Part shown: one piece after another, positions 1-7,597 of the stretch
Layout: every line of letters starts with the position of its first letter
Numbering within the stretch: position 1 is the first letter of the stretch
Assembly: GCF_002571385.2 (NCBI RefSeq)
Contig: NW_019218092.1
Location: forward strand, 96,667 to 160,666
Length of the DNA stretch: 64,000 nt
Direction: 5' to 3'
From: Stylophora pistillata
Taxonomy: Eukaryota
Notes under the pieces: model-generated
The model's database searches: none
Told to the model about the DNA's origin: nothing
Seen by the model: only the letters and a program-made list of their open reading frames with translations
Position numbers and translations under genes: made by a program

Positions 1-931
1 TGGAACTTAACGCATCTGCTTTGCTGTATTTTGTTTTAATTGGCTTAATAACTGTTGCTTGACATAAATTCACGGTCTTTAGTCTCAAGTCTATTTGAAG
101 CGAGATGGAATGCGCGCCAAACGCCCATTTAACTCCAGGATGACATTGCCCTAATCACATAACATTTCTGCTAGATATGATTAATTGCGTTTTAATCGCA
201 GTTCTCTTAGCGAGTTCCTTTGTTGAACTTCAGCGCGTGCGGAGTTGTTTACTACCTCACTAAAAGTTTTCGCGCTTCGTCAATCACTAACAAATTCAGG
301 TAATTTTTTTGCATTTTTATTGACGGAATCAGATCGTATCATACTCTTTACTTAGCACACTACTTGAGATTGTTTTCTTGTGTTCTATGCAGTACTTAAA
401 AACAAACACTTTTTAATTGAAATCCTTTTTGCCCTTACAGACATTAAACGTTCCGACTTTTTTTCTTTGAGTGGTTTTCGATCAGCGTTTCTGTCTTGCT
501 TATCCATTTTCTGTGTTTAAACTAGATTACGATAGTTACGCGTTTGCACACGAGGTGACCATTGCTGCGTTGCAGGAAAGCATCGCTGCGCTAACGAAAG
601 GAAGAAAAATCACTCGATGATCTTGAAGTCTTCATCTTCAACATCAAACCTTATCTATTCTGGGCTGCTTTTCTTCCGTTAATTTCTCTCTCCTGGCGAT
701 AGACCTTTTTTTTTCTTCTTTGTGTTTTTCCTAATTCAATTTGTCAGTCATTCGAGCTCTTGAAAGCTTATCTAGAATTTGTGTCAATAAGTGCCTTCAG
801 TGCGAAGGATACTCTTCACTTGGAATAAAGCCGAGCGACCAGCTGGGAGAGGAAAGTCTATACGTTCTGAGTGATTGCGAAGAGCAAAGGTGCTGAGGTC
901 GTTATAGTGCACAGGAGAGTTACTTTGAGCC

Positions 932-2438
932 ATGCTACTATTCCAAATCACCGTTTCATTTTTTATCGCTGAATTGAGCTGTCTCCGCCATCCCATCGTT
1001 TATGGAAAGGAGAATTTGAAGACTTCGTTGGAAAAAGCTGACCCGCCAAAGCACAGAGAGAAACGATGGCTATGGGGCGGTAAGACTGGGTCTTGTGTGT
1101 TTCTTACCTTCATTCCTTGAAAATCTATGTCATTTTCACAACTGATTTGCTCAACTCGAAAATTAATTTACATAAGCGCTGTTCCGGAGTGTAAACTGAG
1201 GTTATACTTTATCGGTATGGAATAAAGCCAAAATATGTTGCACTTGAGAACTTCACTGACTCACGAGCGCCATCTTCTTGATGTTAGTTTAAGAATCATG
1301 CTTCCGTTGAGAAAGTTTTCTGAAAAAAAAACCAGCATACTTTTAACTTTGTTGAACCAGAATATTTGCAAGAATCTTGACCACTTCATTTTTTGATCCG
1401 GGCTTAGTTATGTAAACCTTTCTGGGGCTCCGTAGTCAACCACAAATATGGACTTTACTTTACCACTACTTCTTCGCCTAAATTAGATAAAATTGCTTTC
1501 ACGTACCATTCTTCACCAACTGATCATCTATCTCAGGACAAAGATTAGAGACGTTTGCTAGAAAACAAAAAATATTTGTCAAAGGTTTTCTGCTTTTTCA
1601 CCAAGCTCCACCCTATATGATGTTTGGAGGCATCTCAATATTTCGATTTTTATCGCGGTTATAGCAAGTCACGAGATCTTTGGTACGAACATTTTACTTG
1701 ACACTACTTCCATAACTTTTCTCAATTGACCTAGCAAATTAACCCCTTTTTCTTTGGTAATTTCTTCACAGTTCTATATTTTGCCATTCCAAAGGAATCT
1801 TGAAATTTAATGCTCTTTAGATGCCGATATGTCTTGGTTTTTCCTCAAAGAATTTTCGAAAATAAAACATGTCCGTCAGTTTCTAAAATAGATCGTGACA
1901 CATCTCGATTAATTTAATCAGATTTCCGTTCTATTTACATGAAATAAATGTGGCGTTTTTAAGATTAGTGTAGCGTGCCTAGATCACTCTCACTTAGACA
2001 GTCCTTTGGAACCGTTCAAAGTTGAACCTCTGAGAAATCACATTTAGGCGGTGCCTCTTGATATTCGATAGCTTAAGACTGAACCGTTCGGCGAAAGACC
2101 TTTTAATTTGCAATAATTACTCTTACCTCATTGAGTTTTGCCAAATCCTGCAATTTGTTTGTAAAGTTAAAGTATGCATGCAAACTGTCCTTCTCAACAA
2201 GTATCGTGTGTGTGCTCAAGAAGCCGATAAAGAGTATATATGAGTCAAGTGAGGGCCATGTACTAAAGCCGCGAGAATATTCGTGTAAAGGGGCATTGAA
2301 AAGCTAATAGATTTCAACACAAGTGCATTGCCTCTAATCCCTCTTAATCAAAAGGCGCACAGTCTAGGCAGGCTTGTTCGTTTTTGGCAGCAAATGCACC
2401 TTTTTGTTATTCGTTGCACTACTATTCAAAGAAGTCAT

Positions 2439-2469
<31 letters not shown>

Positions 2470-5400
2470 GCAATGCAGAGTATGAACAGATTGGGGTCTT
2501 GTCATACTGAACTTTGCAGTCAGAATTCGATCAGTACTATTTCCTAAACAATAAATCTTTTCCAAAGGGCGGATTTGTGCTAAACAGAGGTGTTTTTGCA
2601 TGCGTTTTTAATCAAAGGTTTCTAAATCCTTTGGCTGTTCTTGAATAGTTTTCAAACGACGTGCAAAATTCGCCAAAAATTTGTAAACAGGTCTTATCAT
2701 TGGAATTTTAGGCATGGAAAACAGACCCAAGAAATAATATTTTCATTGCTTTTTAGATAGTGCAGGAATGTCATTTGCACTCACGGAGACAAGTTCAAAA
2801 CAAAAGATTAATTGCCATTCTTAACGATAACAGTTTGTTTTAAATGCAAGTTAAAAGTTTTGTTGATGTTGATCTATATCATGAGATAGATAATCGATTA
2901 AAGCTTATTTCCGGAAATGAACTGAGAAGAGGGTCTGCTAAACAGTGCTCAATTATACCGGACACATTTCATTTGTGCACAACAGGGCCTATCAGAATAA
3001 CACGACCAAGTGTTTTGAACTCTTTCGTGGAATTCATACTACGAATACACACGGCCGCCATGATTTGACTCCTGCGTGTACATTACTGAGCGCGTGCTTA
3101 CAATATAATACCTAGATGACACTCTCGTAAACAAGACCGGCGATCGTTTTGAACAGCAGGGCGAACCCTAAAGGCTTAAAGAGAACCTCTTTCAAACGTG
3201 TGTAACTATGGATCTTTGTCTATTTCACTTTCCTTGTCTCTAATTAGGGTGTGGTTTCATTCCTGGATGTGAACAGTGTAACGATGGACTTATTTGCAAG
3301 AAATGCAGACCAGTTTTCACCCCTGTGGAGTACGAAAGGAACAAAAAGAAGATCATTAGGTGCAGTCGCTCCTGTCCTCCAGGGTACAATCTCACATCTA
3401 CAAGGGAATATCCCAAGATATGTATTAGAACACAATTTGGTAAGTTGAATCAGTTGCATTCCAAGATCCTTTCTTGAACCTAAGACAAATTCTTGGACAT
3501 TTGGACAAGTCAGATATGCATGGTGGTTTATAGCTATCTGTTGGTACTTGGGCAGAGAAATGATGGTGCATCTCCATCAAGAGAAGATAAATCCTCACTG
3601 TGTCTGTTTTCTTGCTGTACAGGTCACAGTGATCGTGTTTCAGTTCCTGTGCTGAAACAGAGAACATAGATGGCTGTCAAATTATGACTTTATTAATGTT
3701 TGGTGAAATATACCAGATAAAATAGTCACGGAATCCATGCAGGTGAAGGAGAAGTTGATTTCACGTCTGTAGGTCACTGCAAGACTGGCAGCAACGTTTA
3801 AATTATAAAAGACATTTTCCCCAAACCCCCAGTTTAAAGGCAATGTATTTAGCCTTAAAGGTGGTCACCCTTCAGTTAAAAGTAATGATAACCAAAGCCC
3901 TTCATTTCCTTGAAAAGTCATTGTTCTGTTATTTAAGGTTGTTCTGCACGACACTGTGAAGACTGTCAATCTCACAACCCAGTTAGCTGCGCGAACTGCA
4001 GTCAGGGATACTATTCACTACAAAAAAGGGTTATGGGAAACGTGAAATGCGTAAAAAAGTGTCCAAATGGTTTCACCCCTAACGTGAACACTGATGGGAA
4101 GATGATTTGCAAAGATTCGCAGTCAAGTAAGAATGATAAAGTTAATAGTTAGTTATAGTTAGGTGGAGGATCCTTGGGGTGTTTAGCATTGCAGAGTTGC
4201 ACAAGTTATGCCCAAAAATCCTCGGACAAAGTTATGTTGTTTTTTTTTTTTGACAACTCTGAGTTGTTTAGCTCTCGATTTTTTGATTTGCGAATTGTCA
4301 ATATAAAGTGAAGAAAACGAAGAAGAAGAAAACTCAGAAGATGGGGAAGGGAGAACATGGCGGGCTAGCCGTTACATGATGCTTTTCATAAGGGAGATCG
4401 GTATTCATCAGAAACCACACAATTTTTATCTCTGCCATTTAAAGTGTTTAAAAAAATTACTGCTTACCTCCTTAACGTTTTGATATTCTAAATAGAGACC
4501 ATTAGGCTCGAAAAATTTTATCATAATTTCCAAGGTAATGAACTGTGGACGCCGGCATTTGAACACAACTTCTATCTTAATCGCAAACACAAAACGCGAC
4601 ACGTCGTTCATCAACAGCAACTGCGGCTATAGCTAAACCAGAAGGAAACATGATCAGAGTCAAGAGTTATAATTTTATATATACTTTTCAGGTTTCCGGA
4701 CCATACTTTTCCCTTTAATGATGGATTTGTCTTTTTACTGGAACTGGAGAGAAGTTAAACGTCAGTGAACATTAGATGATTCTCTCTAAAGATTGAATAA
4801 CTGTAGTGTATTTTTCAAGAACCCTGCTAACACACAGGCTGATTCAATTTTCCCATTTTCAGAATGCCAATCGTTTGTGCCTAACTGTGCTTCGTGCTTA
4901 GATAGCGTACGCTGTCGAAAGTGCAAGAGTGATCTGCATGTCTTCTTTAACAAAAGCGGCATGGCTTGTGTTCAGAACTGTCCGAAGGGCTTCGTCCCCG
5001 CCGACTCCAACTATTTCGGAAAGTACTGTAAAAGGCCACTTGTCGGTAAGTAATACAATCAGATCATCTTTCCTAAGATAAGCCCTCAATAAAATAATAG
5101 ACCTAGATTTATTCTGTCGATGACAACAATGTAGAGAAAAAATGGACTTGAATATAATAAACTCGTCAAAATTTTTTATGAAATAATTGTGATACCCCGT
5201 GACTAAGCGCACTTTAATTCGTCCAAAGACAAATTGTTTGTTTTACAGCTAGAACTAAGGTTATTCTAAGAAATATATCGCACTTTGCATGCTTTCACAG
5301 GCCAAACAGCCCGCATGGTAGGTTTGGAGAACGCTTGAGAATACTCTTCTTCTCCCAATACTACGCCGCCTGAGTTGTTACGCCAATTAGCGCATACACG

Positions 5401-7597
5401 AAAGTACAGTCAATCGGATTTAACATTGTACACCAGCGATACTGAAGAATAACTTAATTATCATAACGTTTTTTTTCCAACAATTTGCCGCCTGAGTTGC
5501 TACGCCAAGTAGCGCATACATGAAAGTGTACAGTCAATCGGATTTAGCACTGTACACCGGCCATACTAAGAAATAACTTAATCATGATAACTTTTTTTTT
5601 CCCAACACTACTCCGCCTGAGTTATTACGCCAATTAGCGCATACACGAAAGTACAGTCAATTGGATTTAACATTGTACACAAGCAATACTGAAGAATAAC
5701 TTAATTATCATAACGTTTTTCTCCAACAATATGCCGCCTGAGTTGCTACGCCAAGTAGCGCATACATGAAAGTGTACAGTCAATCGGATTTAGCACTGTA
5801 CACCAGCCATACTAAGAAATAACTTAATCATGATAACTTTTTTTTTCCCCAACACTACGCCGCCTGAGTTGTTACGCCAATTAGCGCATACACGAAAGTA
5901 CAGTCAATCGGACTTAACACTCTACACCAGGAATACTGAGGAATAACTTAATTATGATTTTTTTTTTCTCTTAACCGTTCGCACTAAACGGGAAAAATTT
6001 TTCATCAATGGTTGGTCTGAGCTCAAACAAGCCACGATGAATTTCAAAACTATTAAAAATATTAAGTGGGCTTTAAATGTTAACCCAGGTCAGCCTACGT
6101 ATGGTACAAATTTCTTGTCTTTTATTTCTTTGGTATGGAAAGAGTGCCGACTAGTTTCAAACTGTGAGAGATGCCCTGACAAGATCAATTGCCGCAGATG
6201 TGAGCCAAGGTTTTACAAGCTCAAAACAAATCCGTTGTCCCGCGCAAAGTGTGTTTCCTCGTGCCCACCAGGGTTTAATAGGAGAGGAAGGAGATGCCAA
6301 CGGATTAAGGAAGGTAACACAGATCAAAGCGATCGATGAGTGTTTAATTGTAGCTTGTGATTTATTGGCGAGTAGGTTTGCAACTGTCTACCTCGCTCTG
6401 TTATCAAAAATTATCTTAAATTGCCCATTTTATTTACAAACACTTCAACGACGTCGTTTCTATCGTCTTTTAGACGGATGCTCTGACGAGTATTGTTTGG
6501 CATGCAAGGAAGGCTGGTATCGCGTCAATTACAACAAAAGACATTGCCAGCGCAAGTGTCCCAAAGGCTTTTACACTCTGGGAAAAAAACAGAAATTCTG
6601 TCTCCGTAAGTACAAAAACTATATGTTAAGCTGGTTGCCAAGCAATGACATAGAGATTGGTTCACAAAGAAATGACCATGCAGTGACGATTCTAAGACCT
6701 TTGAGTTTTTCCTTCACTTTGGAGCCAGTTGTAATAAAGGGGAGGTTATTTATATGAAAGCACTCAGGAGATTCACCAACTGGATTTCTAAGGCTCACTA
6801 CTTCGAAGCCGAGGGCAGATGGTAACTTAACGTATTTTCAGTAAAAAATGAAAACAATTACATTAAAAACGAAGTAAATTATCAAAATAATACAGAGGTA
6901 ATGAATTCAAAATACGTTGAGATAAACGTTTGGTCAAGTTATTCGCTAAATTGTCGACTAGCAACAACATATTCTCTCCTTTTTCTACGTAATTTGCATA
7001 GGATGCTTAGCCCGATGTGAAGAATGTACGAACGGTTTTGACTGCAGCAAGTGTGATCCGGGAACTTTTAAACTTGTCCAGGGTTTGCACACGTCTTGTA
7101 TGACAAGCTGCCCCTTTGGCTACACGAGCCATGGTAACAACAAAACCGGAAGAGTCTGTACACTTAAAAGGTTTGTGAAATACCATACAAATGGAATGCT
7201 AAAAGAGGCCAACAGAGCCTTTGGCAAAGGGCACCCCTTTAAGATCCTTATTGTTCATTGTATGAGCATGTTACCTGGTGAGGTGCAAATAGGTGCGACG
7301 CCAACTGTAAAATTATTATTCAAAGTCTAATTTTGAAGGTGAGCCTTTTCTCATACTCCGTTACGCTTGCATGCTCCTCAAAGGTCGTCGGATATCTTTA
7401 TCAACTGGAGATGGTTTGACCTTTCTTGATGATTCAATGCCCTCTCTCCACTCAAATCTGAGTAGTATTTTCCCTTACTATCCAACTGTGCTTCGTAGAG
7501 TACAAATAACGCGCGAGACGAGTACAAATATCACGCGATATTTGTACTCCAGAAATATCCACGAAATTCGCCCGCACCGAAATAACAATTTGGCGTC

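What the first reader, a model, noticed from the sequence alone, without database searches (positions are those of the whole stretch)
932..4126. R-spondin-like FU1-FU2 module with a furin site in a probable cnidarian
Seen: exons 2-3 encode GCEQCNDGLICKKCRPVFTPVEYERNKKKIIRCSRSCPPGY...ICIR and CSARHCEDCQSHN..CANC, preceded by a signal peptide and REKR. Recalled human RSPO1 reads RQRR...[41 protein letters not shown]...[22 protein letters not shown]. FU1 Cys spacing is 2/5/2/18/3 in both. Both carry ERN in the long hairpin (offset by one residue), SCPPGY and HCExCxSHN, and both encode one FU per exon. R-spondins are generally described from deuterostomes. Inference: a pre-bilaterian proto-R-spondin-like Wnt modulator without the TSP1 domain.
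Basis: partly seen in the sequence, partly recalled or inferred. Interest (0 to 1): 0.85.

Follow-up and report, generated by a model that had tools for sequence, protein, structure and literature searches.

The report
Coral secreted six-repeat R-spondin-type protein
The two R-spondin-like exons are real and expressed in a coral, but they are only the first two of six such repeats in a small secreted protein that lacks the features defining an R-spondin, so it is an uncharacterised coral relative of the R-spondin repeat and not a proto-R-spondin.

Summary
Exon 1 (signal peptide, propeptide, REKR), exon 2 (FU1) and exon 3 (FU2) exist, and RNA-seq shows them spliced as proposed. The organism is a stony coral. 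However, exon 3 splices on to four more one-FU exons. The product is a ~397-aa secreted protein: signal peptide, propeptide, an invariant RxxR site, then six FU repeats. It has no TSR-1 domain and no TM helix. Eight full-length orthologues are all coral; the only named ones are Montipora "PCSK5-like".

The RSPO likeness is real at the domain level. Pfam Furin-like_2 scores above threshold. The PDB hits are R-spondins only. Foldseek ranks RSPO first. The genome's own convertase Cys-rich region instead resembles EGFR-type repeats and scores only 2-12 bits against these modules.

The likeness is not special to FU1-FU2: FU4-FU5 match RSPO2 at least as well. Receptor-contact residues are mostly lost (N51L, Q71K, G73I, no F106/F110).

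A divergent six-FU paralogue lies 8 kb downstream, and a third array lies on another contig. The coral does encode a ZNRF3-like E3 whose RSPO-binding strand is conserved, so a Wnt role remains an untested long shot.

First-stage notes on this same window (s1-775603, s1-775621) had already flagged the tandem FU genes and the missing phenylalanines.

The parts
932..1079 (+). Gene 1, coding part of exon 1: signal peptide (aa 1-~19), propeptide, REKR (nt 1055-1066), then WLWG; phase-1 donor
   Evidence: Sequence. RNA joint 1079|3248 in an X1 contig at depth 45.6 plus one raw read. Matches the N-terminus of orthologue P0018. R42 and R45 are invariant in 8 orthologues.
3248..3439 (+). Gene 1 exon 2 = FU1 (phase 1-1)
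   Evidence: RNA joints on both sides. 91% identical to P0018 aa 50-114. Pfam Furin-like_2 positions 3-53, 18.2 bits. RSPO1 FU1 E 0.005.
3938..4126 (+). Gene 1 exon 3 = FU2 (phase 1-1)
   Evidence: RNA joints 3439|3938 and 4126|4863. Pfam Furin-like_2 positions 57-99. RSPO FU2 E 0.02.
4863..5045 (+). Gene 1 exon 4 = FU3 (phase 1-1), outside the finding's span
   Evidence: RNA joints 4126|4863 and 5045|6143 in X1 (depth 122) and in the 1,913-nt X6 contig. RSPO2 FU2 E 1e-6.
6143..6313 (+). Gene 1 exon 5 = FU4 (phase 1-1)
   Evidence: RNA joints. RSPO2 FU1 E 2.5e-4.
6474..6605 (+). Gene 1 exon 6 = FU5, short 6-Cys repeat (phase 1-1)
   Evidence: RNA joint 6313|6474. The X6 contig leaves the window sequence at 6606 and reads into exon 7. 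Orthologue alignment.
7002..7170 (+). Gene 1 exon 7 = FU6; phase-2 donor AAAAG|GT. A last micro-exon (about two codons plus stop and 3'UTR) was not located
   Evidence: The loose end of the X6 contig matches 7003 onward. tblastn of P0018 aa 328-395. Frame check. Pattern search for the last exon found nothing.
14148..14280 (+). Candidate first exon of gene 2 (MEGKALVICLLWAGFVA..., signal-peptide-like, phase-1 donor); inference only
   Evidence: ORF and hydrophobicity scan. No RNA or orthologue evidence.
15533..19083 (+). Gene 2: six further one-FU exons (about 15533-15712, 16082-16249, 16349-16489, 17168-17329, 18071-18217, 18925-19083); divergent tandem paralogue
   Evidence: Cys-rich frames and AG/GT phase-1 boundaries. 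25-45% identity to P0018. Family-profile hits. Module e groups with FU5 at 99/92.

Best explanation
Gene 1 (932 to about 7170 plus an unplaced last micro-exon) encodes a ~397-aa secreted coral protein. It has a signal peptide, a ~25-aa propeptide and an invariant R-x-[KR]-R site before an invariant [WF]LW. After that come six disulfide-rich furin-like (FU) repeats of the R-spondin type (Pfam Furin-like_2), one per exon. Every FU exon begins in phase 1, and all but the last also end in phase 1. It is homologous to R-spondins at the level of the FU repeat, but it is not an R-spondin orthologue. It belongs to a small family seen only in stony corals, and in this genome that family includes a tandem paralogue 8 kb downstream. 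Shown: gene structure, expression, architecture, domain type, conservation. Inferred mechanism: a furin-type convertase removes the propeptide in the secretory pathway. The mature product is a strongly basic (pI ~9.3, 46 Cys, 5 conserved N-glycosylation sites) beads-on-a-string array of beta-hairpin modules. It is released and acts as an extracellular ligand or adaptor. Its charge would hold it on polyanionic surfaces such as heparan sulfate or acidic matrix, and its conserved FU hairpins would bind a protein partner. The partner is unknown, and the canonical R-spondin contacts for ZNRF3/RNF43 and LGR are not kept.
For: Splice joints linking exons 1-6 and the read-through into exon 7, in RNA contigs of two studies plus raw reads. 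Eight full-length orthologues of 397-419 aa share the architecture signal peptide, propeptide, RxxR, 6 FU and a 2-5 aa tail (up to 31 aa in the 419-aa model). Each FU position forms its own clade across species. FU1-FU5 are equally conserved (0.67-0.73 pairwise identity), FU6 0.53, propeptide 0.43 but with RxxR invariant. Pfam Furin-like_2 is the only family over threshold. PDB sequence hits are R-spondins only. The top Foldseek hits are all RSPO Fu1-Fu2. The same genome's convertase Cys-rich region (P-domain exon 3.3 kb upstream, TM tail) matches GF_recep_IV and EGFR-type domains and scores only 2-12 bits against these modules. pI, Cys and glycosylation-site counts. No TSR-1 signature in the window.
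Against: No functional data exist. The AF2 model has low confidence (pLDDT 61.6, pTM 0.24), so the rod-like shape and the fold matches are soft. The last coding micro-exon was not found. Heparan-sulfate or matrix tethering is inferred from charge alone. The narrow taxonomic range rests on one exhaustive search with a single 65-aa exon and two word-seeded searches, which could miss relatives below about 35% identity.
Confidence: 0.72

Rival explanations
1. One reading: the protein is a cnidarian functional counterpart of R-spondin. One FU1-type hairpin (FU1 or FU4) would bind the coral ZNRF3/RNF43-like PA domain. The basic array would replace the TSR/BR heparan-sulfate anchor. Together these would clear the E3 from the membrane and raise Wnt receptor levels without LGR.
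For: The FU modules are specifically RSPO-type. FU1 has the same 18-residue hairpin length as RSPO1. The coral has a ZNRF3-like gene (ZNRF_3_ecto 48 bits, a hydrophobic TM-like exon seen by eye, RING-H2). Its RSPO-binding strand keeps I98, Q100, H102, L104, G105, Y116 and K125 (residues from PMC3861454). No RSPO is known in Cnidaria (PMC12111769). Nematostella has an orphan type-B LGR (PMC9545775). RSPO2/3 can act without LGRs via ZNRF3 plus HSPG (PMC5800842, abstract only).
Against: Of the RSPO residues that contact ZNRF3, N51 is L, G52 is I/V/L, I69 is K or a gap, Q71 is variable (K/N/T/I/L), and G73 is I/V (Q71R and G73R are disease mutations in RSPO4). S48 is S/T/N, and R66 is kept only with a one-residue shift. 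FU4 also lacks these residues. F106 and F110 are absent in every orthologue. The family was found only in some stony corals, whereas ZNRF3 is expected to be broadly conserved. No binding prediction could be run.
Confidence: 0.12
2. It is a detached proprotein-convertase Cys-rich domain, as NCBI's automatic name 'PCSK5-like' implies. It would act like the PC5A/PACE4 Cys-rich region, tethering to or competing at the cell surface.
For: The Montipora orthologues are auto-named PCSK5-like. The protein carries a furin-type cleavage site.
Against: The transcript starts with its own signal-peptide exon spliced directly to FU1. There are no peptidase S8 or P domains in any orthologue. The modules score 2-12 bits against this genome's real convertase Cys-rich region. 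That region matches GF_recep_IV and EGFR-type domains, while this family matches only RSPO.
Confidence: 0.05
3. It is a lineage-specific secreted structural or defensive product, such as a matrix or skeleton-associated protein or a venom-like Cys-rich protein. Its signal peptide, propeptide and dibasic-site layout is simply the usual cnidarian maturation route.
For: Restricted to stony corals. Tandem and dispersed paralogues suggest lineage-specific expansion. Strongly basic and Cys-rich. A propeptide ending in KR is common in cnidarian secreted peptides (general knowledge).
Against: No proteomic or localisation evidence was found. Six positionally conserved modules at about 70% identity across genera look more like a constrained binding protein than a fast-evolving toxin.
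Confidence: 0.1

Closest known systems
R-spondins RSPO1-4 (Fu1-Fu2 Cys-rich domain, Pfam PF15913)
   Same: Secreted. Same FU repeat type: the only PDB sequence hits (E 2.7e-6 to 1e-3), the top Foldseek hits, and Pfam over threshold. FU1 has the same Cys spacing and 18-residue hairpin. One FU per exon. Basic overall.
   Different: Six FUs instead of two. No TSR-1 or basic C-terminal region. A furin-cleaved propeptide. ZNRF3 contacts are mostly replaced and the LGR Phe clamp is absent. Two different FU pairs (1-2 and 4-5) resemble RSPO Fu1-Fu2 equally.
Montipora 'proprotein convertase subtilisin/kexin type 5-like' predicted proteins (P0019, P0021)
   Same: Same family: 55-63% identity over the full length, same six-FU layout.
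   Different: A different genus. The name is automatic and misleading, since there is no protease domain. P0019 carries a 22-aa insert between FU1 and FU2 that looks like an annotation artefact.
Cys-rich region of PC5/PACE4/furin-type convertases (this genome's copy at C235:417-422 kb)
   Same: Tandem FU repeats. Also matches Pfam Furin-like_2 (39.5 bits).
   Different: Several repeats per exon. Follows a P domain and ends in a TM helix and tail. Its best Pfam match is GF_recep_IV and its best PDB matches are LET-23/EGFR/ErbB4. Scores only 2-12 bits against the window's modules.
Long multi-FU proteins P0024 (548 aa) and P0025 (634 aa) from other sources
   Same: All-FU arrays, 27-28% identity, E 1e-17 to the family profile. 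Some repeats begin CKIEYC/CKIENC, like RSPO FU2.
   Different: About ten repeats. No matching N-terminal signal/propeptide/RxKR. No PDB sequence hit at E<=1. Organism unknown.

Membership tests
R-spondin (RSPO1-4) | Architecture: two furin-like repeats followed by a TSR-1 domain (definition in PMC3937510; TSP1_spondin motif in PMC12111769) | tested here: not met
   Six FUs and a 2-5 aa tail (up to 31 aa in one 419-aa model) in all 8 orthologues. RNA joints run FU2 to FU3 to FU4 to FU5 to FU6. No TSR-1 signature in the window. No scored TSP1_spondin exon on this contig, though only 150 of 731 candidates were scored.
R-spondin (RSPO1-4) | FU repeats of the Fu-CRD type collinear with RSPO Fu1-Fu2 | tested here: met
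   P0001 aa 58-149 vs PF15913 positions 3-86, 37.3 bits against cut-off 28. P0018 53-171 vs RSPO1 12-114, E 1.2e-5. Foldseek top hits. FU4-FU5 matches RSPO2 as well or better (29.6 bits).
R-spondin (RSPO1-4) | ZNRF3/RNF43 contact residues S48, N51, R66, R70, Q71, plus hydrophobic I69/M and G73 | tested here: not met
   Window FU1 has N, L, R (only with a 1-residue shift; E without it), K, K; I69 is K or a gap; G73 is I. Across orthologues: S/T/N; L invariant; the Q71 position varies K/N/T/I/L; G73 is I/V.
R-spondin (RSPO1-4) | LGR4-6 phenylalanine clamp F106/F110 in FU2 | tested here: not met
   The loop reads C[QEHL][SPQ][HQ][NS]P.SC, two residues longer than in RSPO, with no Phe in any orthologue.
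R-spondin (RSPO1-4) | Potentiates Wnt/beta-catenin signalling | not testable with these tools
   Needs a reporter or binding assay. Complex modelling was not possible because the coral ZNRF3 ectodomain is split over small exons.
Pfam PF15913 Furin-like_2 domain family | Whole-protein score over the gathering cut-off (28 bits) | tested here: met
   P0001 scores 37.3 bits. All full-length orthologues carry a precomputed PF15913 hit. Single window exons score 13-20 bits each. The joined window CDS was not searched.
Proprotein convertase PCSK5/6 | Peptidase S8 and P domains upstream of the Cys-rich region | tested here: not met
   The signal-peptide exon is spliced directly to FU1. Orthologues start with Met and a signal peptide and have no other Pfam domain.
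Proprotein convertase PCSK5/6 | FU repeats of the convertase/EGFR (GF_recep_IV) type | tested here: not met
   2-12 bits against this genome's convertase Cys-rich region. No GF_recep_IV or Furin-like Pfam hit. No EGFR-family PDB hit.

The most novel reading that the evidence does not exclude
Corals, which have a ZNRF3-like E3 with a conserved R-spondin-binding strand but no R-spondin, may use this all-FU secreted protein, or its paralogues, as a lineage-specific ZNRF3 (or type-B LGR) ligand. It would tune Wnt receptor levels through a re-wired interface, with the basic FU array standing in for the TSR/BR heparan-sulfate anchor.
Probability: 0.1. Interest if true: 0.8.

Novelty: new variant of a known kind. 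Interest (0 to 1): 0.4.

Why it matters
R-spondins are key amplifiers of Wnt signalling and have not been found in Cnidaria. Yet this coral has a ZNRF3-like ligase with the R-spondin-binding strand intact, and a sea anemone has an orphan type-B LGR. A secreted coral protein built only of R-spondin-type repeats gives a concrete, clonable candidate for testing whether that receptor side has a cnidarian ligand. Even if it does not touch Wnt, two points stand. The R-spondin-type FU repeat exists outside Bilateria as a free-standing, exon-shuffled module. And the automatic name 'PCSK5-like' is wrong for this family.

Tried and rejected
Exons were searched one by one by reference, and the database orthologue P0018 (84-91% identical per exon) served as the full-length proxy.
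2. Exhaustive phmmer with exon 2 against 1.84 billion representatives found only the coral family and two repetitive chance hits; no RSPO reached significance at that database size.
3. The protein atlas gave only generic FU clusters scoring below 0.9.
4. The AF2 model had low confidence, so the fold search is corroboration only.
5. Complex prediction was not run. The coral ZNRF3 ectodomain lies on several small exons, no contiguous reference could be obtained within the length rule of the search for homologous proteins, and I do not claim binding.
6. A pattern search for the last micro-exon (R-[IVN]-T-stop) found nothing.
7. A strict scan for a second signal-peptide + RxKR exon upstream of gene 2 found nothing. 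A looser scan gave one candidate at 14148.
8. The search for a true FU-FU-TSR1 gene was inconclusive, because TSP1_spondin has 731 candidates and only 150 were scored.
9. The 28 nt at the 5' end of the X6 contig, first taken for an alternative first exon, turned out to be the end of an upstream tubulin exon.
10. My first count of seven FUs was wrong; there are six (onward).
11. The idea that FU1 is the most conserved module was rejected: FU1-FU5 are equal.
12. Literature searches for the family name in corals found nothing.
Full report
THE OBSERVATION. An ORF starts at ATG 932 and encodes MLLFQITVSFFIAELSCLRHPIVYGKENLKTSLEKADPPKHREKRWLWG. Its donor is at 1080. The exon 3248-3439 encodes FU1 (…GCEQCNDGLICKKC…ERNKKKIIRCSRSCPPGY…ICIR). 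The exon 3938-4126 encodes FU2 (CSARHCEDCQSHNPVSCANC…). The spacing C-2-C-5-C-2-C-18-C-3-C is the same in both.

RNA runs that hold the stretch are labelled coral or 'coral metagenome'. Laying three contig sets and one raw-read run on 880-6879 gave GT..AG joints at 1079|3248 and 3439|3938.

THE GENE IS LARGER. The same call shows joints 4126|4863, 5045|6143 and 6313|6474. One 1,913-nt contig carries exons 2 to 5, plus about 1,150 nt downstream that this call could not display, and it reads from 6606 into the exon at 7002. A scan for Cys-rich frames had already shown twelve FU-like exons on the + strand, in two clusters.

An exhaustive phmmer search with exon 2 and two word-seeded searches recovered eight full-length orthologues of 397-419 aa. 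P0018 is 84-91% identical to the window per exon. All eight share one layout: signal peptide, propeptide, an invariant R-x-x-R followed by [WF]LW, six FUs and a very short tail. My first count of seven FUs was wrong.

The exon lengths sum to 1,184 coding nt. The roughly 7 nt supplied by an unplaced last micro-exon bring this to 397 codons, as in P0018. P0018 served as the full-length proxy.

WHAT KIND OF FU. They do not.
- Pfam finds only Furin-like_2 over threshold in the orthologue (37.3 vs 28 bits).
- P0018 hits only R-spondins in the PDB.
- Foldseek on a low-confidence AF2 model (pLDDT 61.6) ranks RSPO Fu1-Fu2 structures first, well ahead of HER3 and the insulin receptor.
- For comparison I used the FU array at C235:417-419 kb. 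It lies 3.3 kb downstream of a P-domain exon and ends in a TM helix and tail, so it is the Cys-rich region of a real convertase. It matches GF_recep_IV (69.5 bits) and LET-23/EGFR/ErbB4 (3e-8), with RSPO only at 0.007. The window's modules score just 2-12 bits against it.

So the repeats are R-spondin-type, and NCBI's automatic name 'PCSK5-like' for the Montipora orthologues is misleading.

THE LIKENESS IS NOT SPECIAL TO FU1-FU2.
- Taken singly, FU3 (E 1e-6) and FU4 (2.5e-4) hit RSPO2 better than FU1 (0.005) and FU2 (0.02) hit RSPO1.
- In P0018, FU4-FU5 aligns with RSPO2 residues 11-106 (29.6 bits) and FU1-FU2 aligns with RSPO1 residues 12-114 (27.4 bits).
- With the family profile, the best stretch is again FU4-FU5.

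RSPO MEMBERSHIP FAILS. R-spondins are defined as two FUs plus a TSR-1 domain (PMC3937510). Here there are six FUs and no TSR-1.

The ZNRF3 contacts S48, N51, R66, R70 and Q71, the hydrophobic residue 69 and G73 come from PMC3861454. In this family they read S/T/N, L, R (only after a one-residue shift), K, variable, K or gap, and I/V. Q71R and G73R are loss-of-function mutations in RSPO4. The LGR clamp F106/F110 (PMC12111769) is absent, and the loop is two residues longer.

DISTRIBUTION AND FAMILY.
- Only coral sequences were found; the only named ones are Montipora. No orthologue with a source-given name turned up apart from the two Montipora models, with the caveat that these searches could miss relatives below about 35% identity.
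- Distant all-FU proteins (P0024, P0025; 27-28% identity) exist elsewhere.
- A module tree recovers the six FU positions as separate clades across species: FU1-FU3 strongly, FU6 at 91/90, FU4 at 70/86, and the FU5 clade (99/92) also taking in one gene-2 module. The six-FU layout is therefore ancestral to the family.
- FU1-FU5 are equally conserved at about 0.7 pairwise identity.
- In this genome the family profile also hits the second cluster at window 15.5-19.1 kb (gene 2, six FU exons, 25-45% identity, candidate signal exon at 14148). It also hits a third one-FU-per-exon array on contig C638.

CONTEXT FOR THE WNT IDEA. A 2025 survey found RSPO4-like genes in protostomes but none in Cnidaria (PMC12111769). 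So the premise 'deuterostomes only' is outdated, but a cnidarian RSPO would still be new.

This coral has a ZNRF3-like gene: ZNRF_3_ecto at 48 bits, a hydrophobic TM-like exon seen by eye, and RING-H2. The exon encoding the RSPO-binding strand is about 70% identical to vertebrate ZNRF3. It keeps I98, Q100, H102, L104, G105, Y116 and K125.

Nematostella has an orphan type-B LGR whose ligand 'might be an R-spondin' (PMC9545775). RSPO2/3 can work without LGRs (PMC5800842; taken from its abstract as listed). The receptor side therefore exists, and I give about 10% to the reading that this family, through a re-wired interface, is a ligand for it.

MOST LIKELY MECHANISM. Shown: the gene is expressed, it encodes a signal peptide, it has six RSPO-type FUs, the dibasic site is invariant, and the protein is strongly basic (pI 9.3, 46 Cys, five conserved N-glycosylation sites). 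Secretion itself is inferred from the signal peptide.

Inferred: a furin-type convertase removes the propeptide. A rod of beta-hairpin modules is then secreted, sticks to polyanionic surfaces by charge, and binds a protein partner through its conserved hairpins. The partner is unknown.

Noticed in passing
L001:1222-1530 (G000:C308:91909-92217), 4.4 kb upstream of the window start; joins window 3248: The 1,913-nt X6 RNA contig begins with 28 nt identical to the end of an upstream tubulin exon (donor TTTCAG|GTGAGT; Pfam Tubulin 43 bits). These are joined exactly to the acceptor of exon 2, bypassing the signal-peptide exon. It is either a read-through or chimeric transcript, or an assembly chimera. 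The tubulin copy reads YPSPLIATAVVEP where I recall YPAPQVSTAVVEP in canonical alpha-tubulin.
   Followed up: partly
window 2680-3274 (intron 1): RNA cover inside intron 1 is as high as over the exons in two runs: an X6 contig spans 2810-3274 and runs through the exon-2 acceptor, and X24 raw reads reach depth 3.4 at 2880-3079. Exon 1 is almost uncovered in X24 (0.09). This could be intron retention, an alternative start, or an unrelated transcript. Read numbers are small.
   Followed up: no
window 5353-5958 (intron 4): Tandem repeat of 124 bp (4.9 copies, 82% matches; also read as 247 bp x 2.4 copies at 94%). One RNA-library contig (X2) skips 494 bp here without splice signals (CC..TC), which looks like copy-number variation of the repeat.
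   Followed up: partly
window 14148-19083: A second all-FU gene (six one-FU exons, 25-45% identical to gene 1) lies in tandem 8 kb downstream, with a candidate signal-peptide exon at 14148. Only module e groups clearly with a gene-1 module (FU5).
   Followed up: partly
L009/L010 (G000:C638:14350-17139 and 22426-23955, + strand): A third array of one-FU-per-exon repeats (CxxNCxKCxxxFSCxxCxxGY… CPxGYK) lies on another contig. It is hit by the family profile at FU6 (E 4.7e-6). No TSR-1 signature is nearby.
   Followed up: partly
L008 (G000:C185:114000-123999, - strand): A ZNRF3/RNF43-like gene in small exons (PA-domain exons, a hydrophobic TM-like exon, RING-H2, Ser-rich tail). Its RSPO-binding strand is about 70% identical to vertebrate ZNRF3 (E 1e-15) and closer to ZNRF3 than to RNF43.
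   Followed up: partly
L005/L006 (G000:C235:417300-422600, - strand): A PC5/furin-type convertase: a P_proprotein exon (98 bits), then long exons with many EGFR-type FU repeats, a TM helix and a cytoplasmic tail. The genome has at least 36 P-domain exons, suggesting a large convertase or P-domain family.
   Followed up: partly
P0019 (Montipora foliosa model), alignment A1 columns 117-138: The NCBI model has a 22-aa insert between FU1 and FU2 that is absent from all transcript-derived orthologues. It sits at the exon 2/3 boundary, so it is probably a mis-called splice site.
   Followed up: no
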